From IMG/VR virus record IMGVR_UViG_3300009093_000035, positions 124,001-188,000 of that record: DNA of 64,000 nt, one strand, 5' to 3'. The position numbers and the translations under genes are program-made. The notes below the pieces were generated by a model. That model ran no database searches and had not been told where the DNA came from. It saw nothing but the letters and a program-made list of their open reading frames with translations. Positions 2,463 to 64,000 of the stretch are shown here, one piece after another. How positions within the stretch are numbered: the first letter of the stretch is position 1; each line of letters starts with the position of its first letter.

Positions 2463-2477
2463 ATAGCTATCCCACCG
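2463..2477 (-). promoter_or_regulatory. Putative late promoter motif CGGT-N7-CTAT
   Basis: 15 nt upstream of the ATG at 2447; same pattern recurs at 7 other gene starts. Confidence 0.55.
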
Positions 2478-3636
2478 ACCGGGCTCGGATCTCGGTGGAA
2501 CTGATGTCCCAAGATCCCGGAAGGCGAGTCCAAACGCTGAGCGCCTCCAAAGACACGAGACCCGACGGGGCCAGCTCTTTCGAGCGCTTCTGGGAGACCT
2601 CGTCGATCGTGAGGAGCTTCCCGTCCACGATCCGGTTGGCGACGTAGAACCGACACCCGAGCTTCGAGAACTCGGTGATCATGTCCAGAACGCCGTCTCG
2701 ACCCTCCCCGTACCACTTCGGATCGAGCATCCGATCCATCGCGTCCGTTCCGATCACGAAACCCGCGCCGGGGTACTTCCGAGCCTTGTCGAGGTAGAGC
2801 GCGTCGTCGTACCCGAAGAGGAGGTCCTTCCCCCGGAACTGAGGGATTCGAGCGAGAGCCTCCGACACCGAGATCGTCTCCTTATGAGGAGGCTTCATCG
2901 TGATGTAGTAGGTCGCCCGGAGACCCGAGACCTTCTCCGCCGCCTCGGCCATCCCGAAGTGGCCAAAGTGAACCGGGTTGAACGCCCCCGGCACCAGAAG
3001 AAGCCCCCTCCCGTCCTTCGGGGCTTCCGTCCGAGTCCCGTCGGCTCGGAAGTAGGGGAGGCTCAGGAAGGGGTGGAGGTCTTGCGTCACGTGGACGGCT
3101 CCGCCCTGATAGATCTCCGCATCCAGGGGCTTCCCGGTGTAGGAGAGCTTCGCGGCAGACATGATCATGTCCATCGCGAGATGTACCACGAACTCCTCGT
3201 CCTTCTGACGAGCTTCGTACCCCACCCCTTTCCGGATGATGACGGAAGTGTGGAAGGCCGGCTCGTCCTTCGTACGGACGGCCACGCATACGCGATGGTC
3301 CCCTCGGTGTTCCCGAGTCCCGGCCACCGAAGCCGTGATCCCGACTCCGATCGGAGCCCCAGCCCGCTTCGAAGAGAGAGCCTTCATGTACGAGACCGAG
3401 GCCATGTCCACCGCAACGGACTCGGCGACGTACTTCTCCGGGCGGTACCCAAGGAACTCCGCGGTCGCGTCCTGATCGTACGGGAAGGACCCTCCGACCA
3501 GCACGGAGGAGATTCCGGGGACCGCCCACAACAGGGCCTGGAGGCTCGCCCCGGCCCCCGTAGCGGCGACGTAGAGCCGCGTAGGAGGTCCCGCGATCAA
3601 CCGCTCGATCGCCTCACGTTCAGCGAGCGTAGGCAC
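2467..3636 (-). CDS. CinA/PncC-like domain fused to NMN/NaMN adenylyltransferase (NadD/NadM-like)
   Basis: N-terminal TGAG..PGISS..PY..GVGITAS resembles the CinA C-terminal fold. C-terminal PGAFNPVHFGH (HxGH) and DISSTEIR are nucleotidyltransferase motifs. Overlaps the end of NAMPT. Confidence 0.8.
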   Translation of the reverse strand: MPTLAEREAIERLIAGPPTRLYVAATGAGASLQALLWAVPGISSVLVGGSFPYDQDATAEFLGYRPEKYVAESVAVDMASVSYMKALSSKRAGAPIGVGITASVAGTREHRGDHRVCVAVRTKDEPAFHTSVIIRKGVGYEARQKDEEFVVHLAMDMIMSAAKLSYTGKPLDAEIYQGGAVHVTQDLHPFLSLPYFRADGTRTEAPKDGRGLLLVPGAFNPVHFGHFGMAEAAEKVSGLRATYYITMKPPHKETISVSEALARIPQFRGKDLLFGYDDALYLDKARKYPGAGFVIGTDAMDRMLDPKWYGEGRDGVLDMITEFSKLGCRFYVANRIVDGKLLTIDEVSQKRSKELAPSGLVSLEALSVWTRLPGSWDISSTEIRARSVG

Positions 3637-5029
3637 GAAGCGGCTCCAGTGCGTTCGCCCGGACGACGTCCAGCATGATGCCGGAGCCGACCTGCTTCCC
3701 GTTCTCGTAGACGACGTGGAGGAGGGATGGGGCGTCCGACGAGCCCTCGGGGACGGTCATCGGCCCCGTCGGTCCCATCACGAGATCGAGACGGCCGCGC
3801 TTCGAGCGCTTCCCCGGATCCGTGACCGGGTCCTTGTAGACGTCGACCCACTTCCCGTCGATCAGACCCGACGAGCACTTGAAGGCGAACTTCTGGGTGT
3901 CGCGATCGACCTTCTGGAGAAGAGCCCCGCCCATCCCGAATCCGACGTTCGAGGCCGAGAACTGCTTCGACTCCGCCTCGTCGAGGATCTCCCCGATCGA
4001 GTTGTAGTTGATCCCGTCGCCCTGGATGATGCCGTAGTAGGCCGGAAGGACCTTGTAGCCCTTCTTGTTCTTCACGAGCGTCAGCTTCTTGTCGAGGAGC
4101 TGGAGGCAGGTACGGACGACCTCCGGCGGAATCCCCGAGTCCGGACGGATCACCATCTTCGCTCCCGAGCGCGCGACGTCGGCATGGAGAAGATCGCCCC
4201 AGAGGTTCTCCACGACGTTGTAGAGGTCGTACGAGTCCGAGACGCAGGCGACGATCGTCCCCGGCTTCGCGAACTGCTTGATCATGTTCCGGTACGCCTC
4301 GACCTCCATCTCCCGCCCCCAGGACGTGATCGTGGAGTGTTCGGAGGCCGGAATCGAGAACGCGGCCATTCCCTCGGGAGTCCCGTAGTAATGGTTCGCG
4401 TAGCGAATCCCCTCGATCGTGTCGGAGCCCTTGAAGTTCACGAGGTGGCTCATCCCGCCGATCCCTGCGCTCTCTCGCGAAGAGACGCCGCGCGAACCGA
4501 AGTCATGTAGCTTGAAGTCGATCTCCCCGAGCGGGTCGTCCGACGACTTCAGGAGGTGACGGAAGATCTCCGCCTTGCAGTGCCAAGAGAGCGTCGAGAC
4601 CGTGATCGGGTACCAGAGACGCATCAGCATCGTCTCCAGCCATCCGACGACCCAGAAGGTCTCCGGGTCGGTGCTCTCGACCGTCACGAGAACGTTGTTC
4701 ACGGGAACGACCGTTCCTTCGCGAACAGCCTTGATCCGAACAGGGAAGTAGCCGAGGTCTCGGATCCGCTCCATCCCCTTCCTCGGGAACGGGACGCCGT
4801 GAAGACGACAGAACGTGTCCATCTCGTCGATGTCGGCCGTCGTGACGAGGGCCTGGAGGTACCGAACGATCAGGTACTGGAGACCGAAGAAGACCGTCCG
4901 ATCGAACATCCCTCCTCGCGACTCCAGATACGAGTACATCCCCGTCATCTTGGGCGGGTACTGGAGGAAGTGGGAGGTCTTGTAGCTGTCGACGTCGCCG
5001 ATCGGATTTTCGCGGAGGGGTTCGCTCAT
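3620..5029 (-). CDS. nadV: Nicotinamide phosphoribosyltransferase (NAMPT)
   Basis: DSYKTSH, LHDFGSRG, SIPASEHS, VSDSYD, IRPDSG, IQGDG, FGMGGALLQ, KDPVTDPGKRSKRG motifs. Confidence 0.96.
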   Translation of the reverse strand: MSEPLRENPIGDVDSYKTSHFLQYPPKMTGMYSYLESRGGMFDRTVFFGLQYLIVRYLQALVTTADIDEMDTFCRLHGVPFPRKGMERIRDLGYFPVRIKAVREGTVVPVNNVLVTVESTDPETFWVVGWLETMLMRLWYPITVSTLSWHCKAEIFRHLLKSSDDPLGEIDFKLHDFGSRGVSSRESAGIGGMSHLVNFKGSDTIEGIRYANHYYGTPEGMAAFSIPASEHSTITSWGREMEVEAYRNMIKQFAKPGTIVACVSDSYDLYNVVENLWGDLLHADVARSGAKMVIRPDSGIPPEVVRTCLQLLDKKLTLVKNKKGYKVLPAYYGIIQGDGINYNSIGEILDEAESKQFSASNVGFGMGGALLQKVDRDTQKFAFKCSSGLIDGKWVDVYKDPVTDPGKRSKRGRLDLVMGPTGPMTVPEGSSDAPSLLHVVYENGKQVGSGIMLDVVRANALEPLRAYAR

Positions 5030-5042
5030 GTTCTTGGTCCTG

Positions 5043-5474
5043 TTACTCTTCGGAGGTCGTGTGGAGGGCGTACCCGTCCGACACGTGGTCGAACAGTCGC
5101 TTGTTGTAGTCGTAGAAGCTGTTGGAAGGGTCGAGGAGATCCTTCCACTCGATCCACTTCACCGAGAGACCCGCTTCCTTCGAGAACGGCTCCCCCTCGA
5201 ACTCCGCGAGGTAGGTGATGGAGTCGTAGGTGACCTCGCCGGGACAGAGTCCGCGGAAGATCTTGCGGAGAGTTGTCACAACGACCCCCGTCTCCTCTTG
5301 GACCTCTCGGACGATGGCGTCCTCCGGACTTTCGCCCGTCTCCACCTTCCCGCCCGGGAGACCCATGTCCTCGGGCTTTCCTCGACGGGACACCCCGAGG
5401 ATGAAGCCGTCCTCACGAACGAGGAGGGCGCAGACTGCGAGCGGAACAGCGGGGAGGATCTGGTGGGTGGTCAT
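5043..5474 (-). CDS. Nudix hydrolase
   Basis: Nudix box GGKVETGESPEDAIVREVQEETG. Likely start is MTTHQ at 5474 rather than 5636. Confidence 0.9.
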   Translation of the reverse strand: MTTHQILPAVPLAVCALLVREDGFILGVSRRGKPEDMGLPGGKVETGESPEDAIVREVQEETGVVVTTLRKIFRGLCPGEVTYDSITYLAEFEGEPFSKEAGLSVKWIEWKDLLDPSNSFYDYNKRLFDHVSDGYALHTTSEE

Positions 5475-5772
5475 TCTGTCCGAGGTAACGACCGAGAGAA
5501 GGGTCGCTACACTCCTTACGCCCACTCGGGGCGAGCGATAACGCTCGATCGAGGCGCCGACGTCGCGGTTGCAAATTTTTCGTAACCTTTCTCGATCGAT
5601 CGACTTCGGAAGGATTTTCGGACACTTCCGAGCCAAAAATCGAATTCCAAAATTCGCTGCTGTAGTAGGCCCGGAATTAGCTAGCGGTAGGGGCTCCTGG
5701 GCTTAGATAGGCCCAGTTCCGGAGTTCCCCCCTGGACCTCTTGGTTAAGACCCTACTCACAAAGGACTATCC

Positions 5773-6057
5773 ATGACCCTCGATTCCGCTCGTGTGTCCC
5801 ACCCCTCGACCAACGACCAGAACGTCTCCACCCCCGCTCCGGTGAAGACGAGACCGCGGTCGAGGGAAGCGAAGACGCTCTCGTACCTGAAGAGGCTCCA
5901 CTCTCTCCAGGCGTCCTCCCACGACGTCGCCCGCTACCTCGATCTTCCGAGCCCCTGGGGCCCGGCTCAGGCGGTCGCTTCTCTGGAGAAGCTGATCCGC
6001 GAGAAGAAGGTGAAGAAGGTGAAGTCGGGCGGAGAGACGAGATACCTCGCTCGCTGA
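5773..6057 (+). CDS. Small basic protein, possible winged-helix DNA binder
   Basis: AAGGA SD; helix-turn-helix-like spacing followed by the wing-like KVKKVKSGGETRY. One of very few plus-strand genes. Confidence 0.55.
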   Translation: MTLDSARVSHPSTNDQNVSTPAPVKTRPRSREAKTLSYLKRLHSLQASSHDVARYLDLPSPWGPAQAVASLEKLIREKKVKKVKSGGETRYLAR

Positions 6058-6076
6058 TCCATTCGTCCGAGGGGGG

Positions 6077-6274
6077 CTACAACCTGAGTCCGGGGATCGC
6101 CCAGTCTAGCCATCTCCGGACAAAGAAGACGGGAACGCATACCTCGTCCCCGTACCCGCCGCCGGGTCCTACGACCAGACACCTCACCCCATACAGGTCT
6201 ATGTACGTCCCGGTCGGGATAGGGATCTCGTGGAGCGTCGTCGCGGCGTACCACCTTGCCGTTTCGTCATCCAT
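6077..6274 (-). CDS. Hypothetical protein
   Basis: 65 aa, overlaps the stop of the upstream minus-strand ORF. Confidence 0.45.
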   Translation of the reverse strand: MDDETARWYAATTLHEIPIPTGTYIDLYGVRCLVVGPGGGYGDEVCVPVFFVRRWLDWAIPGLRL

Positions 6275-6689
6275 CCAAGAACGCCTTCAGCCTCGCGAGG
6301 AAGCCTCGGTCCACTCCCGGCAGGTGTGAGCGGCAAGCTCGTCCGTAAGGTTGAGGCTTCTTCGGTAGAATGGGGGCGTTGTCTTCGGTCTTCGAGAGCT
6401 TCTTCGGCTTCTCTTTTTCGACCGGCGTGTGCCAGGCGATCTCGGCGTCGGCCCCACAGCAACAATGCTGGTCCGCCAAGAAGTCGGGATCCTTCGTGAT
6501 GATCAGAGAGGAAGACCCCTCGCCCGAGCGCCTCTGCTCGACCGTCCCGGTTTCCGGGTACGGTTCCGCCTGACGTCGGGCGAGGTCCTCAGCGTCTTTC
6601 TCCCAGGTCGAGGGATCTCCGAGGCGCGAAAGAGCTTCCTCTCGCGAGATCTTCCTTCCCTCCAGGTTGGGATCGAGCGGCTTCGTCAT
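6267..6689 (-). CDS. Hypothetical protein (CCCG...CRSH possible metal site)
   Basis: 140 aa; GGCGTAA motif 9 nt upstream. Confidence 0.6.
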   Translation of the reverse strand: MTKPLDPNLEGRKISREEALSRLGDPSTWEKDAEDLARRQAEPYPETGTVEQRRSGEGSSSLIITKDPDFLADQHCCCGADAEIAWHTPVEKEKPKKLSKTEDNAPILPKKPQPYGRACRSHLPGVDRGFLARLKAFLDG

Positions 6690-6706
6690 ACGACGAAGTT
6701 ACGCCC

Positions 6707-6913
6707 TCACTGACCTTCGGGCGAAGGAACCGACCGTCCCTCGACGGTCGGACCCGAGACGGCTCCCGTCACCGGATCTCGGTTCAGGAAGAAAGTCGGC
6801 CGACCTTCCATATCGATGAAAGCGATCCAGGTCCGGTCTTCGGGCTCGATCCAGCCCTGCCAACCGCCGACCGCCACAGGATCCGAGTATCTCTTCACGA
6901 TGATGTTGTTCAC
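6707..6913 (-). CDS. Hypothetical protein
   Basis: 68 aa, GGAG SD before the GTG. Confidence 0.6.
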   Translation of the reverse strand: MNNIIVKRYSDPVAVGGWQGWIEPEDRTWIAFIDMEGRPTFFLNRDPVTGAVSGPTVEGRSVPSPEGQ

Positions 6914-7208
6914 GGGGATCTCCTAGTTGTGAGGAAGATCCACGAACATCCATCGTGGGTCGCTCGAACTGTACCCGCCTAGTCGGGCCTCTTCAAGTAG
7001 TAACGCCTGTGAACCCCGACCCCGTCAGAGGCGAGAATCTCCCCGCGCTTCCGAAGCCTCTCCAAGGACTCCGCGCAGAGCTTCCACCCCCAGACGCACT
7101 CCTTCCAGGAAGGTTGCTGGTCGAAGCTCAGGTACGGGTAGCTCTGGAGACACTTCAAGACGGACCGGTCGATGATTCGATCGACGGCTTCCGTCGCCTG
7201 CTCTCGCG

Positions 7209-7421
7209 TCAAGGGACCTCCGGGAAACTTCGGTTGTACAGCTCCAAGGCCTGAGTGAGGAGACGCTGCTTCCAGGACAAGTCGTCCTCGTCGGGAGCCT
7301 CCGCGGCGGCCTCGATCGCGGTCCGATTTGCGACGACCCAATTGAGAACGGCCTGGTACTTCGCCGCCCTCTCGGTCTGAATCAATCGAGCCGCGCGTTG
7401 GGTCCAGTGACGACTGCTCAT
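7209..7421 (-). CDS. Hypothetical protein
   Basis: 70 aa, helical; GGCGTAA upstream. Confidence 0.55.
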   Translation of the reverse strand: MSSRHWTQRAARLIQTERAAKYQAVLNWVVANRTAIEAAAEAPDEDDLSWKQRLLTQALELYNRSFPEVP

Positions 7422-7448
7422 GGCCTAGAAGGCCATTACGCCTTGAGG

Positions 7449-9173: not shown

Positions 9174-9176
9174 CGT

Positions 9177-9617
9177 TCAGCTCACTGGCGTGACGAGGAC
9201 GATCTTGTTCGGGACGTCGATTCGAACGAGCCACGACCCCGCGGCAGCGTTCGCGCTCCCGAAGAGCGTGTAGTCGGAGTTGAGACCACCTGGGGTCGTC
9301 CAACCGGCCGAACCGCCTGAAGTGACGTCGATCGTGATCCCGAAAGCGGCGGTGTTCGTCTTCATAACCGTGAAGGCCATCGAAGACGGAGCCACTCTCG
9401 CGTCGATCTTCCGAGTCGCCGTCGGGGTGAACTGGACGATCGGCTCGTTTGCGTTGAAGATCGCGAGAGCCGAGTAGTCCGCGTCATGAGCCGCAGGCGG
9501 GTTCGCAATCGAAGTCGCGTTCGCCGCGACGTCCGAAGTCCCGAGAGCGCCGATCGCGTCCCGAGCGCTCTGCTGAGTAGCTCCGATAGCCTGGAAGAGT
9601 TTTCGGGGGGATGCCAT
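9177..9617 (-). CDS. Putative virion accessory protein with N-terminal PRKLFQAIGATQQSARDAI module
   Basis: Ala/Thr/Gly-rich and beta-rich; N-terminus shared with 11586..13046; late motif upstream. Confidence 0.7.
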   Translation of the reverse strand: MASPRKLFQAIGATQQSARDAIGALGTSDVAANATSIANPPAAHDADYSALAIFNANEPIVQFTPTATRKIDARVAPSSMAFTVMKTNTAAFGITIDVTSGGSAGWTTPGGLNSDYTLFGSANAAAGSWLVRIDVPNKIVLVTPVS

Positions 9618-9634
9618 ACCCCCTACGGACCCTT

Positions 9635-9648
9635 ATAGGCTAGCCAAC
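9635..9648 (-). promoter_or_regulatory. Putative late promoter motif GTT-N7-CTAT
   Basis: 17 nt upstream of the ATG at 9617. Confidence 0.55.
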
Positions 9649-9651
9649 CTG

Positions 9652-9975
9652 TCAGAGATTGGGATCCGACTTCGTCCGCGCGCGAAGAAGACGCCGCGCC
9701 ATGTGACGAGACAAGGTGTCCCCGATCTGGGCCGTCTTGTCCCCGAACTTGTACGGGGGTGGGTGGCGCTCCATGTCCTGGACGATCTTCTCCATCGTCC
9801 CGAACGGAACCTCGTCTCTCAGGAGCTGCCAGATCAGGGAGGCGACCTGGTCCTCTACCTGCCTCATCGTGACGTTGGCGACTGCGATCGCCACATCTTT
9901 CGCTACTCGGGCCGCCACCGCAGCCCGGATACTTTTCGAACGGGCTTTCCTCGAACGAGTCTTCTTCATGGACAA
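9652..9975 (-). CDS. Hypothetical basic protein
   Basis: 107 aa in the minus-strand gene string. Confidence 0.55.
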   Translation of the reverse strand: MSMKKTRSRKARSKSIRAAVAARVAKDVAIAVANVTMRQVEDQVASLIWQLLRDEVPFGTMEKIVQDMERHPPPYKFGDKTAQIGDTLSRHMARRLLRARTKSDPNL

Positions 9976-9977
9976 CC

Positions 9978-10723: not shown

Positions 10724-10962
10724 CCGCGAAGGTTGACTCCCCTAGACCAACCCGGAGTCGGGTAGAGACGCGGACGCCCCATGACTCCCTGACGCTTCGA
10801 AGGCGGATTCATCGGGATCACCGGTCCGTGGGCGTTCACCGGCGTCGACCCGCAAGAGCGGCAGGTCGGGGTCGGGGGATAGATCCCATACCAGACCTCC
10901 GGAACGCAGACCTGACCGCCGCAGTTCCCGCACGTGCCTCTCAGATGTACGCCCATGACCAA
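10705..10962 (-). CDS. Small zinc-finger protein
   Basis: CGNC...CRSC. Confidence 0.55.
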   Translation of the reverse strand: MVMGVHLRGTCGNCGGQVCVPEVWYGIYPPTPTCRSCGSTPVNAHGPVIPMNPPSKRQGVMGRPRLYPTPGWSRGVNLRGWSQLR

Positions 10963-11554: not shown

Positions 11555-11569
11555 CGCTTGAGTGATTAT
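11555..11569 (+). promoter_or_regulatory. Putative late promoter motif CGCT-N7-TTAT
   Basis: 16 nt upstream of the ATG at 11586. Confidence 0.55.
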
Positions 11570-11585: not shown

Positions 11586-13046
11586 ATGGTGCCCCCTCGA
11601 AAACTCTTTCAAGCTATCGGCGCCACCCAGCAGAGCGCGCGAGACGCGATCGCCGCCATCGCGGCCTCCGACGTCGGTGGAAGCGCTCCTGGTCCCTGGG
11701 CCTCGGTCCTTTACGTCGACCAGGTTCGAGGAAACAACACCACCGCTCAGCGAGGGAACGAGAATTTCCCGTTCGCGACGATTCAGGCAGCACTCAACGC
11801 GATGCAAACCGACGACACGGTCATGCTCGCACCCCAGCTCTTCACGATCACCGCAACGCTCACGGTGCCGGCGACGGTCGTGCGCGGCAGTATCTGCGGA
11901 GTCGGGCCATCCGGCGATTACGGCAACCCAGCAACGAGCGGTCCACTGACTAAGCTCGTATCTACTACGACCGATCTTTGGAACTTCGGCGCGAATCTCG
12001 GCTTGACACAATGGGTCATGTCAAACTTCTCGATGCGCACAACCCTCGCGGGCTCTTCGTGCATCCTCGCCGACGGATCGTCATACGCAAAGGCGACGTT
12101 CTTCGGTGCCGGCGGCGGCCTGACCTTGCGGAGCATGGTGCTCCGCAGCGCCAACGGCGCAAACGTGATGAACGTGAAGTATGCCGTCGGCGTCCAGCTC
12201 TTCGACGTTTGGAACACGGGCGGGAACTACTTGTTCACTACCGGAGCGGCGGTGACACTCGACCAGTTCCGCGGGACAGGAACGACAGTCACCACGACCA
12301 ACGACTCGTCTGACCCGCTAGCGATAAGCAACCAATACGCACTACAGATCCAGAACGGTACTCACATCGGCACGAGCGCATTCGGCACTGGTGTCGTCAT
12401 CGGCGGACAGACGAGCCTCAATCAGGACGAGACCTCGATCATCGGTGTTCTGAGTGGCTCTTCACTCTCCGTAGTCGGCTCGGGCAAGCCCGCTTGTGTC
12501 TGCGACGGTTGGATCGGCTCGATCGACTTCGCGAGCGCGGGCAAGGAGATCCCCGACACCGCGCTAGTGCTCTCGTTCATCTTCCAGGGCGCGCGCCTTT
12601 ACCAGAACGGTTTCACCACCATTACACCTGGCGTGTTCAAGGCGAAGGTTGGTGGTTCGGCCGTGAACTTCCAGTCAATGAATATTGACTCTACGACCAC
12701 AGTGCCTGGCGCTACAATCACGGCGGACGCAGCGATTCACATCACAGGACGCGGCGCTCGCTGGCCGAACGTCACGCTCGCGACGCCCGGTACAACGGGC
12801 GACATCATCCCGCCGATCCTCGCTGGCGTGATCGACCTCTCGGCTGGCGGTGCCGTGGCGAAGACGTGGGTTCAGCTCGGTATCCCCGGGCTGATCCGTG
12901 TCGGCGCCGCTCCAAACGAAGCGTTCCTCACGCCGAACATCCGCGGGGCTGACGCCGCAATCACCGTGAAGTCAACCACTGGACTCACTTTCGATTCGGC
13001 AGCGGTCGCGAACAACGCCTGCAACTGGCAGGCCATCTGGAACTGA
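11586..13046 (+). CDS. Beta-helix (pectate-lyase-fold) spike/depolymerase-like protein
   Basis: YVDQVRGN..PFATIQAALNA..DTVMLAP beta-helix cap; G/T/S-rich body; AAGGA SD before the ATG at 11586. Confidence 0.75.
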   Translation: MVPPRKLFQAIGATQQSARDAIAAIAASDVGGSAPGPWASVLYVDQVRGNNTTAQRGNENFPFATIQAALNAMQTDDTVMLAPQLFTITATLTVPATVVRGSICGVGPSGDYGNPATSGPLTKLVSTTTDLWNFGANLGLTQWVMSNFSMRTTLAGSSCILADGSSYAKATFFGAGGGLTLRSMVLRSANGANVMNVKYAVGVQLFDVWNTGGNYLFTTGAAVTLDQFRGTGTTVTTTNDSSDPLAISNQYALQIQNGTHIGTSAFGTGVVIGGQTSLNQDETSIIGVLSGSSLSVVGSGKPACVCDGWIGSIDFASAGKEIPDTALVLSFIFQGARLYQNGFTTITPGVFKAKVGGSAVNFQSMNIDSTTTVPGATITADAAIHITGRGARWPNVTLATPGTTGDIIPPILAGVIDLSAGGAVAKTWVQLGIPGLIRVGAAPNEAFLTPNIRGADAAITVKSTTGLTFDSAAVANNACNWQAIWN

Positions 13047-16907: not shown

Positions 16908-17435
16908 TCACCGGGCCGCCGCCCGGAGACAATGCTCTACGAAGTCGGAAGGCGGGCGAACGGCGTGCTTCTCGATGTAGTGGGCGAAGCCCTCGGGCCA
17001 GACGTAGGAGTCGTCGGTGAGGTCGGCCGAACCGTTCCGTACGCCGCACATCCTACAGTCCGACCATCCTCGGTACTGAGAAGCCGTCTTCCCGCCCCGG
17101 ACGTAGCTGAGGACGATCTCCCGTTCCGAGGCGTCCCAAGTCGGGTCTACGCTCGTCTCTACGGCCGGAAGGTCCATCTCCCCCGAGCCCTCGTAGATCC
17201 CCCACGAGGCCGGTACGGGCTTCCAGAAGCCGACCTTCGGTAGGCTCGCGAGTCTCTCGTTCCGCGCTCGGATCTTCGCGATCTCCGCGTCGGCCGGGAG
17301 CGCGTACTGATCCAACCCCCCTCGGGTCATCCTGATCACGCTCGCTTGCCTACCCACCAGAAGCGGGAGGAGAAACGGACGAAGCTCGGGCTTCGAGTGA
17401 GCCAGCCGGATCGTCTTCGATCGGAGATCGGTCAT
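16908..17435 (-). CDS. Tagged protein (LRSKTIRLAHSKPELR) with C-terminal CxxC...WPEG..HY..H domain; putative head cargo
   Basis: N-terminal tag ending in RQAS; late motif upstream. Confidence 0.8.
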   Translation of the reverse strand: MTDLRSKTIRLAHSKPELRPFLLPLLVGRQASVIRMTRGGLDQYALPADAEIAKIRARNERLASLPKVGFWKPVPASWGIYEGSGEMDLPAVETSVDPTWDASEREIVLSYVRGGKTASQYRGWSDCRMCGVRNGSADLTDDSYVWPEGFAHYIEKHAVRPPSDFVEHCLRAAAR

Positions 17436-17451: not shown

Positions 17452-17466
17452 ATAGGAGCCTCAGCG
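17452..17466 (-). promoter_or_regulatory. Putative late promoter motif CGCT-N7-CTAT
   Basis: 16 nt upstream of the ATG at 17435. Confidence 0.55.
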
Positions 17467-25641: not shown

Positions 25642-25737
25642 GAATTCCTCCAGGTGTAGGCTCGTTGAAGGGGTCGGAGCCTTGGTTGGGTGCTACAGTA
25701 CACCCTACCTTCTCGCCCCCGCAATAAGCAAACTATC

Positions 25738-28977: not shown

Positions 28978-29442
28978 TCAGCCTTCGTGAGAAGCCGTGT
29001 GGGCCCTCTTCCGAACCAGGGCGAGGTCTGCAACGTGAGAAGCAAGGGAGATCCGACCCTCGGGCGAGGCCAACCGACTCGCCTCGGTCATCTCCCGAAG
29101 GTCGAAACACTCCGGGGCGAAGTCCTTCCGGATGTCCCGAAGCGCCTGGGCGATCTCCCGAGGGTCTTCCTCGTCGATCCACCTCTCCTGAAGGTCGCGA
29201 ACGAAGTCCGCCTTCCCTTCGAGTAGGGACTCCCACTTCTGCTTCGTATCGAGGGAGAGGGCCTCCTCGAAGAGGGCTTCGATCGTGAGGAAGTGCTTCC
29301 GGATACAGTCATGACAGCGCTTCCGCTCGTTGTTGAGGTGATCCTCCAAGAGCGCGCACTGCTTGCAGATCTCCCTCAGGTTGAAGAGGGGGTGCATGAT
29401 CGGAAGAAGGTCTTCCGTGGCGATGATGCGTCGGCGGTTCAA
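28978..29442 (-). CDS. Hypothetical protein (C..CIRKH); start probably the TTG at 29442
   Basis: Late motif CGGT-N7-CTAT at 29472-29486 overlaps the track's start codon. Confidence 0.65.
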   Translation of the reverse strand: MNRRRIIATEDLLPIMHPLFNLREICKQCALLEDHLNNERKRCHDCIRKHFLTIEALFEEALSLDTKQKWESLLEGKADFVRDLQERWIDEEDPREIAQALRDIRKDFAPECFDLREMTEASRLASPEGRISLASHVADLALVRKRAHTASHEG

Positions 29443-29491
29443 GTCCAGATCCGTCCTAAGCCCCGGCGGCCATAGGCTCAGCACCGGGGTG

Positions 29492-39995: not shown

Positions 39996-40322
39996 CTACC
40001 AGATGAAGTTCGTCTCGAACCCGCGAGACTCCATCCACGCCGCGAGCTTCCGGAGCCCGTCGCAGTCGGAGGCCCAAACCTCGATCGTGTTCGTCCCGAC
40101 GATCTCTCGAACCCCCAGGTTCTGGATCGAAGCCAGGGAGCCGATCCGGCTCTTCCCGTCCCTCCAGGACCGCAAGGATCCGACGAGAAGCCTCATGTCC
40201 AGCTCGGACTTCCCCGAGCCCGCCATGACGGTGAATCGGAATTCCTCGGTGGAATTCGCTGAAATCCAACGGTCCGCCACCTGACGGGCCATCGCGATCT
40301 TTACTTCAGGCCGTAGTTCCAA
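39996..40322 (-). CDS. Hypothetical protein, first gene of the putative late operon
   Basis: TTG at 40322 with GAGGA SD; CGTT-N7-CTAT at 40352-40366. Confidence 0.6.
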   Translation of the reverse strand: MELRPEVKIAMARQVADRWISANSTEEFRFTVMAGSGKSELDMRLLVGSLRSWRDGKSRIGSLASIQNLGVREIVGTNTIEVWASDCDGLRKLAAWMESRGFETNFIW

Positions 40323-40372: not shown

Positions 40373-40984
40373 TCAGTCGATCACGCAGTCGATCCGAGAA
40401 GTCGGAGTCCGACGGCGACGAACTTCCCTCATGATGTTGAGGTTGTCCGCGATCATCTTGAAGATGTCCGAGTAGAAAGCCATCGACTCGTCGGCCGACA
40501 TCTTCTTGATCGAACGAATGAACCGGTGTCGGACGAGCCCCTGCGAAACCTTCAGTCGCTTCGCGCTCTCGCTCTGACACGTCGTCTCGTACATGAACAT
40601 CATGATGTCGATGTCCATGGGGTCTGTCATGAACCGGGAGAGATCCGCTCTCATCTGAACCACATCCACCTTCGGGAGGATCAGAAGGAACTTGATTCGA
40701 TCGATCGCTCGATAGAGACGATAGCAGACTGTGGGTTGACTCACCCCGAAGATCGACGCGATGTCGGTCTGCTTGACATGCTTGAAGAAGTACATGTCCA
40801 TGAAGTCGGCTTCGACGGGAGGGAGGAGGTCGAGCATCCCCTTCACCTTGTCCATCATCTTGACGTCGTCCTCGTCAGGCTCGGTGAACACCGAACCGAA
40901 GTACGAGAGGGAGTCCTCCGTAGAGAACACCGCGTCCGGATCAAACGAGGCGGCTGAGCCCCGAAAATTTTGACTCGTCTTCAT
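40373..40984 (-). CDS. Protein with two tandem sigma70 region-4-like HTH domains
   Basis: LPPVE..KQTDIASIFGVSQPTVCYRLYRA and CQSESAKRLKVSQGLVRHRFIRS. Confidence 0.75.
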   Translation of the reverse strand: MKTSQNFRGSAASFDPDAVFSTEDSLSYFGSVFTEPDEDDVKMMDKVKGMLDLLPPVEADFMDMYFFKHVKQTDIASIFGVSQPTVCYRLYRAIDRIKFLLILPKVDVVQMRADLSRFMTDPMDIDIMMFMYETTCQSESAKRLKVSQGLVRHRFIRSIKKMSADESMAFYSDIFKMIADNLNIMREVRRRRTPTSRIDCVID

Positions 40985-41014: not shown

Positions 41015-41623
41015 TCAATCCTCAGGGATATACTCGGGACCTACGGCGACGTCAAGAGGGTCGACTTCGCTGAGAGTATCCTCTCCTGAGTTCTCCGAGA
41101 CGTCTACCAGAAAGACCTTGGGCAACCAAGTCACGACGTCGATAGACCTGAGTGTGATACGAACGGCAGCACGATCTCCGTTCAAATCTACCACTTCGCC
41201 CTCCAGGTGGGTGTAGTTCCCACCTGTGATTTTCACCTTCGCCTCGATCTCGATGTCTGAAGAGACCTGACTCCTCAGCTGGTCCATCATGCCTCGAATC
41301 TTCGAGTCGGGGACCGTCTGGAGCGTTCGAAGATTGTAGGGTCCCGAGGAGGACATGACTCGGCTCACCAGCGCTCCGCGCTCTAGAGCAAAGTACCGGG
41401 TCTCCGTTAGACCGGAGCCTACGAACGCGTAACCCTCGATCAGGCGGACCGAGACTTTTCTCCCGCCCTTCGAGTAACTGGTGTAGGGAACGAAGATCGG
41501 ATGGGACTCGGGGATAGACAGACCGCTACGCAACGCTTCTACGAGCGTTCCGTCGATCGCCTTCTGTTCACCCGCCTTGGTCAGCTCCAGCGCTACCCAA
41601 GTTATCTTGTCCCGAACGTCCAT
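41015..41623 (-). CDS. NusG/RfaH-family transcription elongation factor
   Basis: NGN: W..L, IFVP..RLIEGYAFV. KOW: KVKITGGNYTHLEGEVV. Confidence 0.85.
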   Translation of the reverse strand: MDVRDKITWVALELTKAGEQKAIDGTLVEALRSGLSIPESHPIFVPYTSYSKGGRKVSVRLIEGYAFVGSGLTETRYFALERGALVSRVMSSSGPYNLRTLQTVPDSKIRGMMDQLRSQVSSDIEIEAKVKITGGNYTHLEGEVVDLNGDRAAVRITLRSIDVVTWLPKVFLVDVSENSGEDTLSEVDPLDVAVGPEYIPED

Positions 41624-58803: not shown

Positions 58804-60732
58804 TCAGATCTCGCAGGCACCGCCTACACAAGCGGCTTCCTGGGCTCCATTCCCCTCGTCCATCGTCTCGTAGAACGAGAGTTCGTTGAAGTGAACCGCG
58901 GGCATCGAGGCCACGGCCTCATTGTACTGATCCTCGGTCAGCTCCACGTACGGAGCGAGCTTGTAGAGGCCGCCGTCGTGGGGAAGGAAAGAGAGACCGG
59001 TGACGGAGTCGAAGTGGTTCCAGAGCCACTCCCCGACCGGACCCCACTCCTCGTCGCGGACGTAGATCGTAGCCGACTGGTTGTGGCCCTTGTCGCCACA
59101 CCAGGTCTCCATGATCTTCAGATAGCGTTCGAGCTGGTCGAGCGCCTTCTCGTCGTGGCGGGTCATCGCCCCTTCCGGAGCGCGGACGGGGAACCGAGCG
59201 ACCCAGACGTCCACGTCCTTGTCTTCGAGGTGCTCCTGGCCGTTCTCCTTGAAGACCGGGACGCCGAAGTCGCGGATCAGGCGGAAGAGCGGATCCTTCG
59301 CCGAGATCCGGACGTGACGGAAGTAGAACTTCGCGTAGCGGGGGTGGAAGCCCGAAGCGCAGTCCACGAACTGAGAGGAGTTCCCCGAGGGCTTCCCGCA
59401 GGTCACCGCTGCCGGACGATTGATCCCGATCTGATCGGCCGCGAGGATCGCCGTCGAACGCGCGATCGCGTTGAGGTAGGTCATCGAGTCCTTGTCCCCG
59501 GAGAGAGCCGGGTTGTCGCACTGACCCGTGATGTCCACTCCGAGAAGACGGTCCTCGTCGCAGAGTTCGGCCCAAGCCGGACGCAGGTACGGGAAGTGGG
59601 TGTAGCTGGACTGGACCGACCCGATCCAGGTCGCGATCCGGATCTTCTCCGCCATCGTCTCGACCGTGTCGTGGGAGCGCATCACCGCCGCCGTGAGGTT
59701 GCAGAACTGACCGCCGCCGCCCTCGCCTGTCCACGGGTCGAGCGCGCGCTTGAAGCGGAGGAGGATCTCCCCACACGGATTCGAGCGGAACTCGCCGCCA
59801 CGCTTCAGGCGCTTCTCGGGACCCGTGATGTAGAACCCGCGCTCCCCCGAGCCCGACTTCGCGAGCGCGTTCCACTCGCGATCGAAGACCTCGCGCGTCG
59901 GCTTCTCTTCGAAGACTGCCGAGTTGTTCGCCATGTAGCGAATCGTCGGGAACTGGCCGAGGCTCCAGTCCTTCGCCTGACGCATCTCCGTGTCGTCCGG
60001 ATCCGAGAACGAGATCAGAGAGGCGCGGCGGAACCCGCCGACCATGACGATCTCCGCGATCATGCACATGATGTCGTGGGCCTCGACGGACTTCAGCCCG
60101 CGGCCGACCGCCCCGCGAATCGTCTCGCGTGAGAAGTCCAGAACGCGCTTCAACGGCTCCGGACCCGAAGCCCGCCCGCCCTTCGTCTTCAGCCGAGCGC
60201 CCTTCGGACGGATCCGATCGTAGTGGAACGTCACGTCGTCACCGCGATGGAAGGCGGTGATGCCGAAGAAGACCGCGTCCGCCCAGCCCTCGGTCGAGTC
60301 CTGGATGACGTAGTCGACGCTGTTCCCTGTCGACTCGGAGATCTTCGGGAGGTTGTCCACGAACGTTCGCTCGACCGAGAATCCGACGCCCGTGCCCTGC
60401 ATCAGGATGTAGAGGGCCTCGGAGAACGCCTTCAGGTTGTCCACCGGAAGGAAGGAGCAGTTGTAGCCGCACGTGTTGTCGCGAGTCATCGCGTCGCCCG
60501 CACACCAGAGCGAACGCATCGACGGCATCACGTCGAGATTCAGGATCGCGTCGTAGGCCTTCTGCTGAAGGTCGTTCGGGACGTTCTTCCCGCGGAAGAT
60601 GAAGTTGACGTAGCGTGACACCGTCTCCGGCCACGACTCCCTACGTCTCTCTTCCTCCAGCCACCTACTGTAGGTGCGCGTGTAGACGAACTCACTCAGT
60701 AGATTCGGGAAAGAGAAACCCGCTTCGAGCAT
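58804..60732 (-). CDS. nrdJ: Class II (adenosylcobalamin) ribonucleotide reductase
   Basis: RTYSR, PSMRSLW, YNCSF, VGGFRRAS, NPCGEI, CNL, KPSG, C-terminal CVGGACEI. Confidence 0.93.
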   Translation of the reverse strand: MLEAGFSFPNLLSEFVYTRTYSRWLEEERRRESWPETVSRYVNFIFRGKNVPNDLQQKAYDAILNLDVMPSMRSLWCAGDAMTRDNTCGYNCSFLPVDNLKAFSEALYILMQGTGVGFSVERTFVDNLPKISESTGNSVDYVIQDSTEGWADAVFFGITAFHRGDDVTFHYDRIRPKGARLKTKGGRASGPEPLKRVLDFSRETIRGAVGRGLKSVEAHDIMCMIAEIVMVGGFRRASLISFSDPDDTEMRQAKDWSLGQFPTIRYMANNSAVFEEKPTREVFDREWNALAKSGSGERGFYITGPEKRLKRGGEFRSNPCGEILLRFKRALDPWTGEGGGGQFCNLTAAVMRSHDTVETMAEKIRIATWIGSVQSSYTHFPYLRPAWAELCDEDRLLGVDITGQCDNPALSGDKDSMTYLNAIARSTAILAADQIGINRPAAVTCGKPSGNSSQFVDCASGFHPRYAKFYFRHVRISAKDPLFRLIRDFGVPVFKENGQEHLEDKDVDVWVARFPVRAPEGAMTRHDEKALDQLERYLKIMETWCGDKGHNQSATIYVRDEEWGPVGEWLWNHFDSVTGLSFLPHDGGLYKLAPYVELTEDQYNEAVASMPAVHFNELSFYETMDEGNGAQEAACVGGACEI

Positions 60733-62476: not shown

Positions 62477-62495
62477 GAGAACGGAACCTTACGCC

Positions 62496-64000
62496 CTAGA
62501 GCTTACCTTTCGACTCCAACGCCTGGTACACAGTCGGGTAGTTGGTCTTCATCTCCCCTCGACCAATACCACCAAGGTACGAAGCGACCTGCTGAAAGCT
62601 TCTACCGTCCTCGACCATTTCCATGGCCTTGTCTTCCTGGTCTCGACGGAAGGAATCGAGCTTCCCCTTAGCACCGGCTTGCCTCGACGACTCCCAGACC
62701 CTCGTCCCCAGGCCGCTGCTGTTCAGGGTGGCGACCTCGATCTTCACCCCGTTCTTCGAAAGCTTGTAGTTGGCGCGAAACCCGCCGTGTTCCACGTTGG
62801 CGTGGTCCATCTTCCAACCGGCCTTCTCCAAGGCGTCGGTCACGTCGGTGTCGTTCTTCTTCTTCGAGGTCCAGGCCAAGGCCCCCGCGACCGGAGGAGT
62901 GAGACGGATCCCCGCCTTCTTCAGATCCGCTACGAAGGCCGGAACATCGGCCGCCTCCTTCAAGACCGGAAGAAGCGTCGACCGGAGTTCAGGCTTCGAG
63001 TGAGCGAGACGAATCAGTTGGGAGCGGAGGGCCATACGAGGTTGAGTTGATAGGCTTCCTACTTTCGTAGGTTCCCACTTCACCGTCCCGCGAGTCTTCT
63101 CCAAGGCATCCTGATACTCCTGATCGGAGGGTTCCTTCTTGGTCATCCGGGCGGGCTTGAAGGTTTCGAACACGCGGAGGTTCGAGGCTGGGATACGACC
63201 TTCGTAGGCGACCGTCCCCTTCGCTCGAAGGGTCGAGAGCATCTTCTGTTCGAACTTCCGGGCGATCTCGTCCGCGTTCGGCTTACCCCTCCAGTTCCCC
63301 TTGAAGTGAACATCCTGTTGATCGGAGGGCATCTCTGGCATGACGCTACTCAGCCATCCGCCGTTGTCTTCGTCGAGACGAAACTTCGTGAAGTCGTTCA
63401 CCTCGACTTCGAGGACTACGGCGATCGACCTATCGATCGAAGCCGCCCGCGCCGCGTACTTCTCGGCTTCGGAGACCTTCGTGGTCAGATAGACCATGCG
63501 ATCCGAATAGCCCTTGATCACGTCGTTGGAGTAGGCGTCCTCATCAATCCCTGTAGGACTCCCGGGACGCAGACCCTTGATCTTGATCACCTTCCAACGG
63601 ACCGCCGACGTTCCGTGATACATCTTCACGGAACCGAAGCTCTTCGAGGAGACCTCGTCGACCGTGTCGACTTCGCTCGACCCGAGGATCTCTCCGACTG
63701 TCTTGTTCCTCCAGACAGGAGACTTGAAGATCCGGTAATCGCTCTGGACGAACCCGCCCTGTAGGAGCGCCTTCAGAATCTTCCGAACCTTCCGAGGATC
63801 GTCCTCCAGCTCTGTGTCGGCGTGAGGGTACGCGTACGAGCCGTTCCCCTTGATCGCGGGATACCGAGACTGGGTCTTCGACTCAAACGGGCTGAGGTCG
63901 AGCGTTCCCGTGCTCGGGTCTACTCCGATGATCGGAGAGTAGTAGAACTTGTCGTCCTCTCGATACGAGAGACGGGCGCTGACGCCAGTTAGAAAGAGAA
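62496..64000 (-). CDS. Multi-module protein starting beyond the window: ADP-ribosyltransferase-like domain, internal LRSQLIRLAHSKPELR tag, C-terminal module
   Basis: Frame is open from 63998 with no stop. MYHGTS..GLRP..VYLT..AEKYA..VLEV..IP resembles H-type ART/Tpt1-like folds. Internal ATG at 63035 begins the tag. Confidence 0.75.
   Translation of the reverse strand, partial: LFLTGVSARLSYREDDKFYYSPIIGVDPSTGTLDLSPFESKTQSRYPAIKGNGSYAYPHADTELEDDPRKVRKILKALLQGGFVQSDYRIFKSPVWRNKTVGEILGSSEVDTVDEVSSKSFGSVKMYHGTSAVRWKVIKIKGLRPGSPTGIDEDAYSNDVIKGYSDRMVYLTTKVSEAEKYAARAASIDRSIAVVLEVEVNDFTKFRLDEDNGGWLSSVMPEMPSDQQDVHFKGNWRGKPNADEIARKFEQKMLSTLRAKGTVAYEGRIPASNLRVFETFKPARMTKKEPSDQEYQDALEKTRGTVKWEPTKVGSLSTQPRMALRSQLIRLAHSKPELRSTLLPVLKEAADVPAFVADLKKAGIRLTPPVAGALAWTSKKKNDTDVTDALEKAGWKMDHANVEHGGFRANYKLSKNGVKIEVATLNSSGLGTRVWESSRQAGAKGKLDSFRRDQEDKAMEMVEDGRSFQQVASYLGGIGRGEMKTNYPTVYQALESKGKL
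63050..63063 (-). promoter_or_regulatory. Intragenic putative late promoter AGT-N7-CTAT
   Basis: 14 nt upstream of the internal tag ATG at 63035. Confidence 0.45.

What the first reader, a model, noticed from the sequence alone, without database searches (positions are those of the whole stretch)
2463..63063. Short late-promoter-like motif (C)GNT-N7-YTAT links scattered genes to the virion programme
Seen at 2463-2477, 9635-9648, 11555-11569 (+ strand), 17452-17466, 25724-25737, 29472-29486, 40352-40366 and 63050-63063 (AGT variant). It always points toward a start codon, and five copies are 14-17 nt from the ATG. Downstream genes are structural, fibre-like or tag-bearing. TAT is uncommon in this GC-rich DNA. 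It does not resemble a sigma70 -35/-10 pair.
Basis: seen in the sequence. Interest (0 to 1): 0.66.

Follow-up and report, generated by a model that had tools for sequence, protein, structure and literature searches.

The report
Conserved compact promoter-like motif, huge phage
A short two-part DNA signal, CG(G/T)T, seven bases, then CTAT, sits just upstream of some 25-30 genes of an uncultured soil "huge phage" and is kept at the same genes in related phages, so it is most likely a phage-specific promoter of a kind not yet described, although no transcript data exist to prove it.

Summary
The eight strings are all present as described. The window is part of a 248.6-kb IMG/VR phage contig (GC 61%, about 56% complete) of the Bacillus phage G / Tunturi_5 lineage.

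The raw count of GNT-N7-YTAT is not above chance: 12 in the window against 12.9±3.4 in shuffles. What is non-random is placement.
- Genome-wide, 27 of 37 hits fall in the 14% of non-coding DNA.
- The same pattern with any other spacer (0-15) gives only 4-13 non-coding hits.
- 25 of the 27 point at the downstream gene, and 12 of 23 lie 14-19 nt from the start codon.
- The motif is kept upstream of orthologous genes in 5-8 related phages (GC 50-67%) while the flanks diverge.

The refined consensus is C-G-K-T-N7-C-T-A-T. It shows no shared RNA fold and no Rfam match, and it does not fit sigma70, sigma54, T4-late or T7-type consensus. No RNA polymerase, gp55-like factor or sigma54 DNA-binding domain was found in the five clade genomes searched. 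A sigma70 region 2 turned up in only one, incomplete, relative.

Best reading: a phage-specific promoter class. It is distinct from a second class I found, GTGTAR-N17-GTTAC. Four sites lie inside the packaging/head module, so "late" is plausible but unproven; the major capsid gene lacks the motif. A conserved tandem sigma-region-4 protein next to site 7 is a candidate reader, which is speculative.

The parts
2463..2477 (-). Motif copy 1, CGGTGGGATAGCTAT, 15 nt upstream of the ATG of gene 1809-2447. It overlaps the 3' end of the upstream gene.
9635..9648 (-). Motif copy 2, GTTGGCTAGCCTAT, 17 nt upstream of the ATG of gene 9177-9617.
11555..11569 (+). Motif copy 3, CGCTTGAGTGATTAT, 16 nt upstream of the ATG at 11586. 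This is a + strand gene in a mostly - strand region. It has a paralogous copy, including the upstream region, at genome position 33074.
17452..17466 (-). Motif copy 4, CGCTGAGGCTCCTAT, 16 nt upstream of the ATG of gene 16908-17435.
25724..25737 (-). Motif copy 5, GATAGTTTGCTTAT. It lies directly after the stop of the 1078-aa gene and 82 nt upstream of gene 25033-25641. The ortholog's upstream region in relative G003 carries GTTTAGTTCCTTAT; G004 shows the same string, cut at the edge of the display.
29472..29486 (-). Motif copy 6, CGGTGCTGAGCCTAT, between the portal gene and the conserved 154-aa gene. It is kept at the same place in 7 related phage contigs.
40352..40366 (-). Motif copy 7, CGTTTTCCAACCTAT, 20 nt after the tandem sigma-r4 gene and 59 nt upstream of a conserved 98-aa gene my caller missed. 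It is kept in 4 relatives; a fifth has an AAT variant.
63050..63063 (-). Motif copy 8, AGTAGGAAGCCTAT (A instead of G). It lies 14 nt upstream of an in-frame ATG at 63035 that begins a tag2 sequence inside a 539-aa open frame. Its status is less certain.
10879..10892 (-). Further exact match, GGTATGGGATCTAT, in a stretch my caller left uncalled, 170 nt from the next called start. Status unknown.
1809..2447 (-). Downstream gene of copy 1, 212 aa, with N-terminal tag2 (LRSxxIRLAHxKPELR...). No family match.
9177..9617 (-). Downstream gene of copy 2, 146 aa, with N-terminal tag1 (MASPRKLFQAIGATQQSARDAI).
11586..13046 (+). Downstream gene of copy 3, 486 aa, with N-terminal tag1.
16908..17435 (-). 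Downstream gene of copy 4, 175 aa, with N-terminal tag2 and a DUF7919 match.
28978..29442 (-). Conserved gene after the portal gene (about 154 aa, start codon uncertain), downstream of copy 6.
39996..40292 (-). Conserved 98-aa gene not found by my gene caller. It is the first gene downstream of copy 7 and heads a gene string that has no large gap and runs through TerL and the portal gene.
40373..40984 (-). 203-aa protein with two tandem sigma-70 region-4-like HTH units. It is 78-85% identical in close relatives and present in every clade genome tested. Candidate reader of a phage promoter class (inference only).
41015..41623 (-). NusG/UpxY-like transcription antiterminator paralog, adjacent to the sigma-r4 gene.

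Best explanation
The motif is a phage-specific promoter class with consensus 5'-C-G-(G/T)-T-N7-C-T-A-T-3' on the coding strand. Its two short half-sites are 11 bp apart centre to centre, about one helical turn. Some 25-30 copies in the 248-kb contig head transcription units.

The motif is compact and lies close to start codons (mode 14-19 nt). I therefore infer that transcription starts a few to about ten nucleotides past TAT and gives very short leaders at about half the sites.

The clade encodes no recognisable RNA polymerase. I therefore infer that host core polymerase reads the motif, directed by a factor still to be identified, either phage-encoded or a host alternative sigma. The conserved tandem sigma-region-4 protein beside site 7 is a candidate.

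This class is distinct from a second one in the same genome, GTGTAR-N17-GTTAC. That class has classical -35/-10 geometry and clusters among small early-type genes. The class studied here is spread through the rest of the genome, including the packaging/head module, and so probably serves middle or late genes.

Shown: non-random placement, spacer specificity, orientation and cross-genome conservation. Inferred: promoter function, the start site, the reading factor and the timing.
For: - Placement: 27 of 37 hits are intergenic.
- Spacer: N7 gives 27 intergenic hits against a mean of 8.3 for other spacers.
- Base requirements: G0 and T2 are both needed. T2 with CTAT is enriched at N7 even without G0, 12 against 2-5.
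- Orientation: 25 of 27 point toward the downstream gene.
- Distance: there is a mode at 14-19 nt.
- A gene-caller-free test agrees.
- The spacer-specific intergenic excess replicates in relative G004, 16 against 3-11.
- Orthologous conservation with diverged flanks: after the portal gene and before the 154-aa gene in 8 genomes; before the 98-aa gene in 5 genomes, plus one variant; before orthologs of the genes at genome positions 82283, 217660 and 225567, and at site 5.
- The distance to the start codon varies between orthologs (14 against 42 nt; 59 against about 55 nt). This argues against an element tied to the ribosome-binding site.
- A 111-nt divergent intergenic region carries one copy facing each gene, and the motif precedes + strand genes in a genome whose genes lie mostly on the - strand.
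- There is no extended similarity beyond the motif columns, so this is not a repeat family.
- There is no shared RNA fold and no Rfam family.
- Canonical sigma70-like sites are not enriched.
Against: - There are no transcript 5' ends. Only DNA runs from rhizosphere metagenomes hold the sequence.
- No polymerase or sigma factor can be tied to the motif.
- The motif is short, and its raw frequency equals chance. About 8 of the 27 intergenic hits are therefore expected to be background.
- The excess is not visible in relative G003, GC 56%.
- Seven or eight sites precede paralogous tag-bearing genes and are not fully independent.
- The very tight 14-19 nt spacing to ATG would also suit an element acting on translation initiation.
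- The major head gene's upstream region lacks the motif, so this cannot be the only late promoter, if it is late at all.
Confidence: 0.6

Rival explanations
1. The motif is an operator for a phage DNA-binding regulator, for example the tandem-HTH sigma-r4 protein. That protein would activate or repress promoters that overlap the motif or lie nearby. The motif itself would not be what the polymerase holoenzyme recognises.
For: - The two half-sites are one helical turn apart, which suits a protein with two HTH units. Such a protein is encoded 20 nt upstream of site 7 and is conserved across the whole clade.
- The placement, orientation and conservation data fit this reading as well as they fit a promoter.
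Against: - No second, promoter-like conserved element accompanies the motif within ±25 nt.
- The motif is asymmetric and strictly oriented toward the gene.
- At the divergent 111-nt region each gene has its own copy, and no other motif class I scanned for occurs there.
Confidence: 0.16
2. The motif is an RNA-level signal in the 5' leader: a linear binding site for a translational regulator, or a processing site for an endoribonuclease in the manner of T4 RegA or RegB. It would act on polycistronic transcripts.
For: - It is strand-specific and lies very close to start codons; 12 of 23 sites are 14-19 nt upstream.
- Several copies lie between co-directional genes with tiny gaps, or overlap the end of the upstream gene.
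- Start-proximal SD-like G runs sit unusually close to the ATG at these genes.
Against: - The distance to the start codon is not kept between orthologs (14 against 42 nt) and reaches 59-82 nt at conserved sites 5 and 7.
- There is no shared secondary structure and no Rfam hit.
- Copies occur at divergent and strand-switch positions, where a promoter is required and I saw no other recurrent motif.
Confidence: 0.12
3. The apparent motif is a by-product of composition and paralogy. TAT is tolerated only outside genes, and duplicated tag-gene cassettes inflate the count. No function attaches to the pattern.
For: - The raw count equals the shuffle expectation.
- TAT is three-fold depleted and concentrated in non-coding DNA.
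- Seven or eight sites precede paralogous N-terminal tags, and two of them share the whole upstream region.
Against: - The spacer control keeps composition constant and still gives 27 against 8.3, or 22 against 8.3 without the paralogs.
- The upstream G and T are individually required.
- The excess replicates in G004.
- The motif is kept at orthologous sites in up to 8 genomes of GC 50-67% while the flanks are unalignable.
Confidence: 0.04

Closest known systems
Phage T4 late promoters (TATAAATA, read by gp55 with gp33 and the sliding clamp)
   Same: - A short phage-specific element with no -35 partner at 17 bp.
- It lies close to start codons and is scattered through morphogenesis genes.
- This phage also carries clamp-loader genes next to its transcription-factor genes.
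   Different: - The consensus differs. Only TAT is shared, and the positions after TAT are unconserved.
- There is an obligatory upstream half-site, G-N-T, 7 nt away.
- No gp55-like protein was detected in five clade genomes.
Sigma54 -24/-12 promoters (GG-N10-GC)
   Same: A compact bipartite geometry with half-sites about one helical turn apart, and a G-rich upstream half (CGG/CGT).
   Different: - The defining GC at -12 is replaced by an invariant AT.
- The second G is present in only 13 of 27 sites.
- No Sigma54 DNA-binding domain is encoded by the clade.
T7/SP6-type single-subunit polymerase promoters (…CACTATAG)
   Same: An overall footprint of about 15-17 bp with CTAT near the 3' end, upstream of a short leader.
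   Different: - Only 8 of about 15 positions are conserved here, whereas T7-type promoters have a near-invariant block of about 20 bp.
- No PF00940 polymerase was found in the clade, while the T7 positive control was found.
T4 middle promoters (MotA box plus -10, sigma appropriation by AsiA/MotA)
   Same: The concept of a phage DNA-binding protein supplying an upstream contact, at non-standard spacing, to a host polymerase. A conserved phage protein with sigma-region-4-like HTH units is present.
   Different: - The MotA box lies at about -30, with a sigma70-type -10 element.
- Here the upstream half is only 7 nt from CTAT, and no TAnnnT -10 element is conserved.
- I searched for no MotA or AsiA homolog.
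The second promoter class of the same genome, GTGTAR-N17-GTTAC
   Same: - Intergenic, oriented and upstream of start codons.
- Its half-site words are likewise enriched upstream of genes in relatives.
   Different: - It has classical two-hexamer geometry with an exact 17-nt spacer in 19 of 20 copies.
- It clusters at genome positions 100-110 kb and 200-247 kb among small genes, where the CTAT class is rare.

Membership tests
Sigma70-type -35/-10 promoter | Two hexamers separated by 16-18 nt | tested here: not met
   The half-sites are separated by exactly 7 nt. The sigma70 consensus scan finds 1 site in window 1-20000 against 2.0 expected, and none at the motif copies.
Sigma70-type -35/-10 promoter | -10 hexamer TAnnnT with a conserved final T | tested here: not met
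   The three positions after TAT are unconserved (A5-6, C4-10, G7-12, T4-5 of 27).
Sigma54 -24/-12 promoter | Invariant GG and GC dinucleotides 10 nt apart | tested here: not met
   The position equivalent to GC is an invariant AT, and the second G is present in 13 of 27 sites.
Sigma54 -24/-12 promoter | A sigma54 factor available | tested here: inconclusive
   No Sigma54_DBD was found in five clade genomes. The host is unknown, so a host sigma54 cannot be tested.
T4-type late promoter | A single A/T-rich -10 octamer, TATAAATA | tested here: not met
   Only TAT is shared. There is no A-rich extension, and an upstream half-site is required.
T4-type late promoter | A gp55-family late sigma encoded by the phage | tested here: not met
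   phrog_234 and phrog_12791 gave no match at E<=1 in G000-G004, two of which are complete genomes. G000 itself is only about 56% complete.
T7-like single-subunit polymerase promoter | A phage-encoded PF00940 polymerase | tested here: not met
   No match in G000-G004, while T7 used as positive control gave E=1e-109.
T7-like single-subunit polymerase promoter | A contiguous, highly conserved block of about 17-23 bp spanning the start site | tested here: not met
   Information is confined to C-G-K-T and C-T-A-T; the seven spacer positions and both flanks are near background.
phiKZ/AR9-type promoters of phage multisubunit polymerases | Phage-encoded beta/beta' homologs | tested here: not met
   PF00623 and PF00562 gave no match in five clade genomes, while the controls were found in 14 of 14. 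Very divergent homologs could escape Pfam.
Structured cis-regulatory RNA | A shared secondary structure or a known family | tested here: not met
   Twelve sites folded. Z-scores ran from -3.1 to +0.6, and the three that folded well have different folds. Rfam gave 0 matches in the window.
Promoter (generic) | Primary transcript 5' ends just downstream | not testable with these tools
   No RNA run holds the sequence, and the host is uncultured and unknown.

The most novel reading that the evidence does not exclude
Phage G-type huge phages have been reported to lack both a polymerase and sigma factors. In this reading they redirect host core polymerase with a conserved tandem sigma-region-4 protein. 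Its two HTH units read the two half-sites, CGKT and CTAT, one helical turn apart. This would define a new compact promoter architecture at about -22/-10 that yields near-leaderless mRNAs for morphogenesis genes.
Probability: 0.1. Interest if true: 0.75.

Novelty: new variant of a known kind. Interest (0 to 1): 0.45.

Why it matters
Phage-specific promoter classes are a familiar idea. For the phage G lineage of huge phages, however, the comparative literature reports neither a phage polymerase nor sigma factors (PMC7824862). The recent phage G multi-omics paper offers only generic promoter predictions (PMC12484599).

A compact motif conserved across the clade, together with a second class of classical geometry, gives the first concrete handle on the transcription programme of these uncultured phages.
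- It allows operon and timing maps to be drawn from sequence alone.
- It points to a testable candidate specificity factor, the tandem sigma-region-4 protein beside a NusG paralog.
- If transcripts really start a few bases past TAT, half of these genes would have leaders under about 10 nt, which bears on how their translation begins.

Tried and rejected
- De novo EM motif search on all upstream regions drifted to weak compositional and SD-like patterns and did not isolate the motif. I replaced it with anchored profiles, spacer controls and discriminative k-mers.
- Megablast of 12 kb against cultured phages found nothing.
- No RNA-seq was available. Only three rhizosphere DNA runs hold the sequence, so I did not use read laying, which cannot show transcript ends from DNA contigs.
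- Searches for a reading enzyme or factor were all negative: Sigma70_r2 (one ORF, in relative G004 only, with no homolog in G000), T7-like polymerase, beta/beta', gp55 and the sigma54 DNA-binding domain.
- The structure model of the tandem sigma-r4 protein was confident only for residues 100-180. Foldseek gave only weak LuxR/GerE/sigma4 HTH hits, all with E>0.1. It supports 'HTH', nothing more.
- I looked for the motif downstream of the sigma-r4 gene in the low-GC relatives G001, G002 and G005. My peptide anchor did not match, and I dropped the attempt.
- The spacer-specific excess is not detectable in G003, GC 56%, or in the pooled 20-kb portal loci. Background is too high or the sample too small.
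- Testing the GGCGTAAG motif as a variant 3' half of this motif showed no N7-specific partner.
- GGTAGAG enrichment is partly a tRNA D-arm signal.
- I did not use complex prediction, because no protein-protein claim is made.

Full report
**Context**

The window is bases 124,001-188,000 of a single 248,579-bp IMG/VR virus contig. The contig has GC 61.4% and is linear, and CheckV puts it at about 56% complete.
- It has no near-identical cultured relative.
- Its portal protein is 70% identical to that of a 485-kb uncultured phage (LR745208.1). It is 38% identical to that of Tunturiibacter phage Tunturi_5 and 26% to that of Bacillus phage G.
- The DNA is held only by rhizosphere metagenome DNA runs.

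I called genes with a self-trained codon model: 275 genes, 234 of them on the - strand. The caller is crude. It missed several real genes, so its 'intergenic' fraction of 14% is an overestimate, which makes the enrichment figures below conservative.

Landmarks in the window:

| Gene | Window coordinates |
|---|---|
| Large terminase | 31946-33793 |
| Portal | 29492-31273 |
| Protease-like | 22982-24427 |
| Major head protein | 19445-20323 |
| Clamp loader | 41568-42848 |
| NusG/UpxY-like | 41015-41623 |
| 203-aa sigma-region-4 protein | 40373-40984 |
| Helicase | 55891-58287 |
| Ribonucleotide reductase | 58804-60732 |
| Nicotinamide phosphoribosyl transferase | 3620-5029 |

The pattern carries only about 11 bits, and its raw frequency is exactly what chance gives: 12 matches in the window against 12.9±3.4 in shuffles.

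The signal lies elsewhere.
- **Placement.** Genome-wide, 27 of 37 matches fall in the 14% of bases I call intergenic.
- **Spacer.** I kept the pattern and changed only the spacer from 0 to 15. Intergenic hits were then 4-13 (mean 8.3) for every spacer except 7, which gave 27. That is Poisson p=2e-7, or 6e-5 after removing five sites upstream of paralogous genes.
- **No gene calls needed.** 20 of 37 N7 matches are followed within 8-40 nt by an ATG opening at least 80 codons, against 0-8 for other spacers.
- **Unbiased profile.** I aligned every TAT that lies 5-45 nt upstream of a start, with no prior.
- **Base requirements.** Replacing G0 or T2 by any other base drops intergenic hits from 27 to 5-12. 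T2 plus CTAT is enriched at N7 even without G0, 12 against 2-5, and four of those read CGT-N7-CTAT.
- **Refined consensus.** It is C-G-K-T-N7-C-T-A-T. Nothing is conserved in the spacer or the flanks, so this is not a dispersed repeat.
- **Orientation and distance.** 25 of 27 intergenic copies point at the downstream gene. Distances from TAT to the called start are -2, 14, 14, 15×5, 16, 17, 18, 19, 19, 23-34 (8 sites), 74 and 82.

**Conservation**

The portal protein retrieved 25 related IMG/VR loci with GC from 39% to 67%. The sigma-r4 protein retrieved three further contigs.
- **Site 6**, after the portal gene and before a conserved 154-aa gene, reads as follows:

| Genome | Sequence |
|---|---|
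| G000 | GGTGCTGAGCCTAT |
| L014 (G004) | GGTTCGCTTTCTAT |
| L035 (G003) | GGTTCTGTCACTAT |
| L013 | GGTTCGATTCCTAT |
| L016 | GGTTCTAGTCCTAT |
| L018 | GTTCATTTGCCTAT |
| L031/L032 | GGTCGTTTGCCTAT |

  The surrounding sequence is not alignable.
- **Site 7** lies before a conserved 98-aa gene that my caller had missed (window 39996-40292). It reads GTTTTCCAACCTAT, GTTTTCCGCCCTAT, GTTTTACGCCCTAT, GTTTTCCCCCCTAT and GTTAAGTACCCTAT in five genomes. A sixth has AATAGGGCCTTTAT.
- **Site 5** is kept in G003.
- Orthologs of three other motif-headed genes, at genome positions 82283, 217660 and 225567, carry the motif in G004. Their distances to the start codon differ from G000: 42 against 14, 14 against 15, and 14 against 19 nt.
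- The spacer-specific intergenic excess replicates in the 199-kb relative G004, 16 against 3-11. It is not visible in G003, where TAT is commoner.

**What it is**

The element is asymmetric, strand-specific and just upstream of genes, and it is conserved independently of the coding sequence.
- **It sits where promoters must be.** The 111-nt divergent region at genome positions 29625-29735 carries one copy facing each gene, 30 and 15 nt from the two ATGs. Copies also precede + strand genes in a genome whose genes lie mostly on the - strand, at genome positions 29736, 33102 and 135586.
- **Distance varies.** The distance to the start codon differs between orthologs and reaches 59-82 nt at the conserved sites 7 and 5. 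This argues against an element locked to the ribosome-binding site.
- **No structured RNA.** Twelve sites folded as RNA share no structure. Z-scores run from -3.1 to +0.6, and the three that fold well fold differently. Rfam finds nothing in the window.
- **No canonical signals.** Sigma70-like sites and intrinsic terminators are not enriched in window 1-20000.

I therefore read the motif as a promoter class. Rivals are an operator for a DNA-binding regulator, a linear RNA signal, and chance plus paralogy, in that order.

**Which polymerase?**

Pfam and PHROG profile searches covered G000 and four relatives, two of them complete.
- They found no T7-like polymerase (the T7 control was found), no beta or beta' homolog, no gp55-type late sigma and no sigma54 DNA-binding domain.
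- Sigma70 region 2 turned up in only one accessory ORF, in G004.
- This agrees with Iyer et al. 2021 (PMC7824862), who state that group 3 jumbo phages, the phage G type, lack both polymerase subunits and sigma factors.
- The phage G multi-omics paper (PMC12484599) reports only PhagePromoter predictions.

Host polymerase is therefore the likely enzyme. The specificity factor is unknown.

One candidate is the 203-aa protein encoded 20 nt upstream of site 7.
- Residues 34-99 match sigma region 4 (Pfam E=5.5e-8; TIGR02937 E=1.9e-10).
- Residues about 108-163 form a second unit of the same kind. In the AF2 model it has four helices at pLDDT 85-95.
- The protein is 78-85% identical among six relatives. 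It has homologs in all clade genomes tested, including complete low-GC ones, and its look-alike clusters are almost entirely viral.
- Two HTH units could read two half-sites one helical turn apart.

That is inference only. The same protein could equally serve the other promoter class.

**Timing**

A second motif, GTGTAR-N17-GTTAC, has an exact 17-nt spacer in 19 of 20 copies. All 19 copies found by a looser scan are intergenic. It clusters at genome positions 100-110 and 200-247 kb among small genes. The words of its two halves are likewise enriched upstream of genes in G003 and G004.

The CTAT class is largely complementary in distribution. In the window it punctuates the packaging/head module in this order:
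- site 7, then the 98-aa gene, tail-like genes, TerL and portal;
- site 6, then the 154-aa and 1078-aa genes;
- site 5, then the 202-aa gene, protease and onward to the major head gene;
- site 4.

Two downstream genes elsewhere are tail-fibre-like. Eight or nine sites precede genes with one of two conserved N-terminal tags.

This fits a middle or late class. Several points weaken it.
- The 430 nt upstream of the major-head gene cluster follow a terminator-like hairpin and carry none of the motifs I scanned for.
- Some downstream genes look non-structural.
- Most are unannotated, and no expression data exist.

**The eight sites**

| Sites | Assessment |
|---|---|
| 1-4 | Well placed, 15-17 nt from the ATG |
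| 5, 6, 7 | Conserved in relatives |
| 8 | A-for-G variant, 14 nt upstream of an ATG that begins a tag2 sequence at residue 361 of a 539-aa open frame |

At site 8, third-position GC dips just before that ATG. This could be an internal promoter and start, or a gene boundary lost in assembly. It is the least secure of the eight.

**Limits**

- The gene calls are my own and crude.
- The contig is about half a genome, and the host is unknown.
- About eight of the 27 intergenic matches are expected background.
- Nothing here shows a transcript start.

Noticed in passing
window 5485-5512 (-); genome-wide 20 copies, e.g. L010 and L009 regions (genome 221-247 kb, 100-110 kb): A second, much stronger upstream motif, GTGTAR-N17-GTTAC, often extended to GAGTGTAAAG…CTCGTTCGTTACA. 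It has exactly 17 nt between the halves in 19 of 20 copies. All 19 copies found by a looser scan are intergenic, mostly 6-47 nt from start codons of small genes. Related words (CGTGTAA, CCGTTAC) are enriched upstream of genes in relatives G003 and G004. It looks like an early promoter class with -35/-10 geometry but a non-sigma70 consensus.
   Followed up: partly
window e.g. 6699-6704, 14998-15003 (-); genome-wide: GGCGTAAG(G) is the most enriched intergenic word: GCGTAA occurs 30 times upstream against 1.9 expected. It often lies 7-12 nt before ATG in tiny gaps right after the upstream stop codon. It is equally enriched in relative G004 (GCGTAAGG 14 upstream, 0 coding). Its function is unknown. 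It has no N7-spaced GNT partner.
   Followed up: partly
window 9177-9617(-), 11586-13046(+); genome 8437-8538, 33102-, 212165-212242: N-terminal 'tag1', MA(S/P)PRKLFQAIGATQQSARDAI, is shared by 5-6 otherwise different proteins. Four or five of them are preceded by the CTAT motif.
   Followed up: partly
window 1809-2447(-), 16908-17435(-), 62496-63035(-), 1430-1516(-); at least 12 genes genome-wide and several in G003/G004: N-terminal 'tag2', LRSxxIRLAHxKPELRxxLLPLLKEA, is found at the start of at least 12 different proteins. It is also multi-copy in relatives at 47-77% identity. It may be a targeting or docking peptide. Only 4 of the 12 have the motif upstream.
   Followed up: partly
window 62496-64000 and beyond (genome 186496-188115, -): A 539-aa open frame contains a tag2 sequence beginning with Met at residue 361, and third-position GC dips just before it. 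This is either two genes run together or an internal start.
   Followed up: partly
window 40373-42848 (-): A conserved cluster of clamp loader, NusG/UpxY-like antiterminator and tandem sigma-region-4 protein, 66-85% identical in relatives. The sigma-r4 protein belongs to clusters that are almost entirely viral in the ESM Atlas.
   Followed up: partly
window 39996-40292 (-): A conserved 98-aa gene (64% identical in G004, 63% in G003) that simple gene calling missed. Several other 'gaps' in my calls (34542-35229, 45502-46215, 43724-44444) also read as coding.
   Followed up: partly
L008 442-11553 (genome 188.4-199.6 kb, -): An array of 44 tRNA genes covering most amino acids, plus a tmRNA with tag peptide ANDSSYDQLAQAA.
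   Followed up: yes
window about 21400-21445 (-): A GC-rich hairpin followed by a T-run (gggactgggcttcggcccggtccc-ttttcgtttc) lies right after the 508-aa gene. About 380 nt then follow, with none of the motifs I scanned for, before the gene cluster that holds the major head gene.
   Followed up: no
window 3620-5029 (-): A nicotinamide phosphoribosyl transferase gene (phrog_448, E=2e-145), an auxiliary metabolic gene.
   Followed up: no
L038 256-1119 (relative G004): A 288-aa ORF with sigma70 region 2 is present in relative G004 only. It has no homolog in the G000 fragment.
   Followed up: partly
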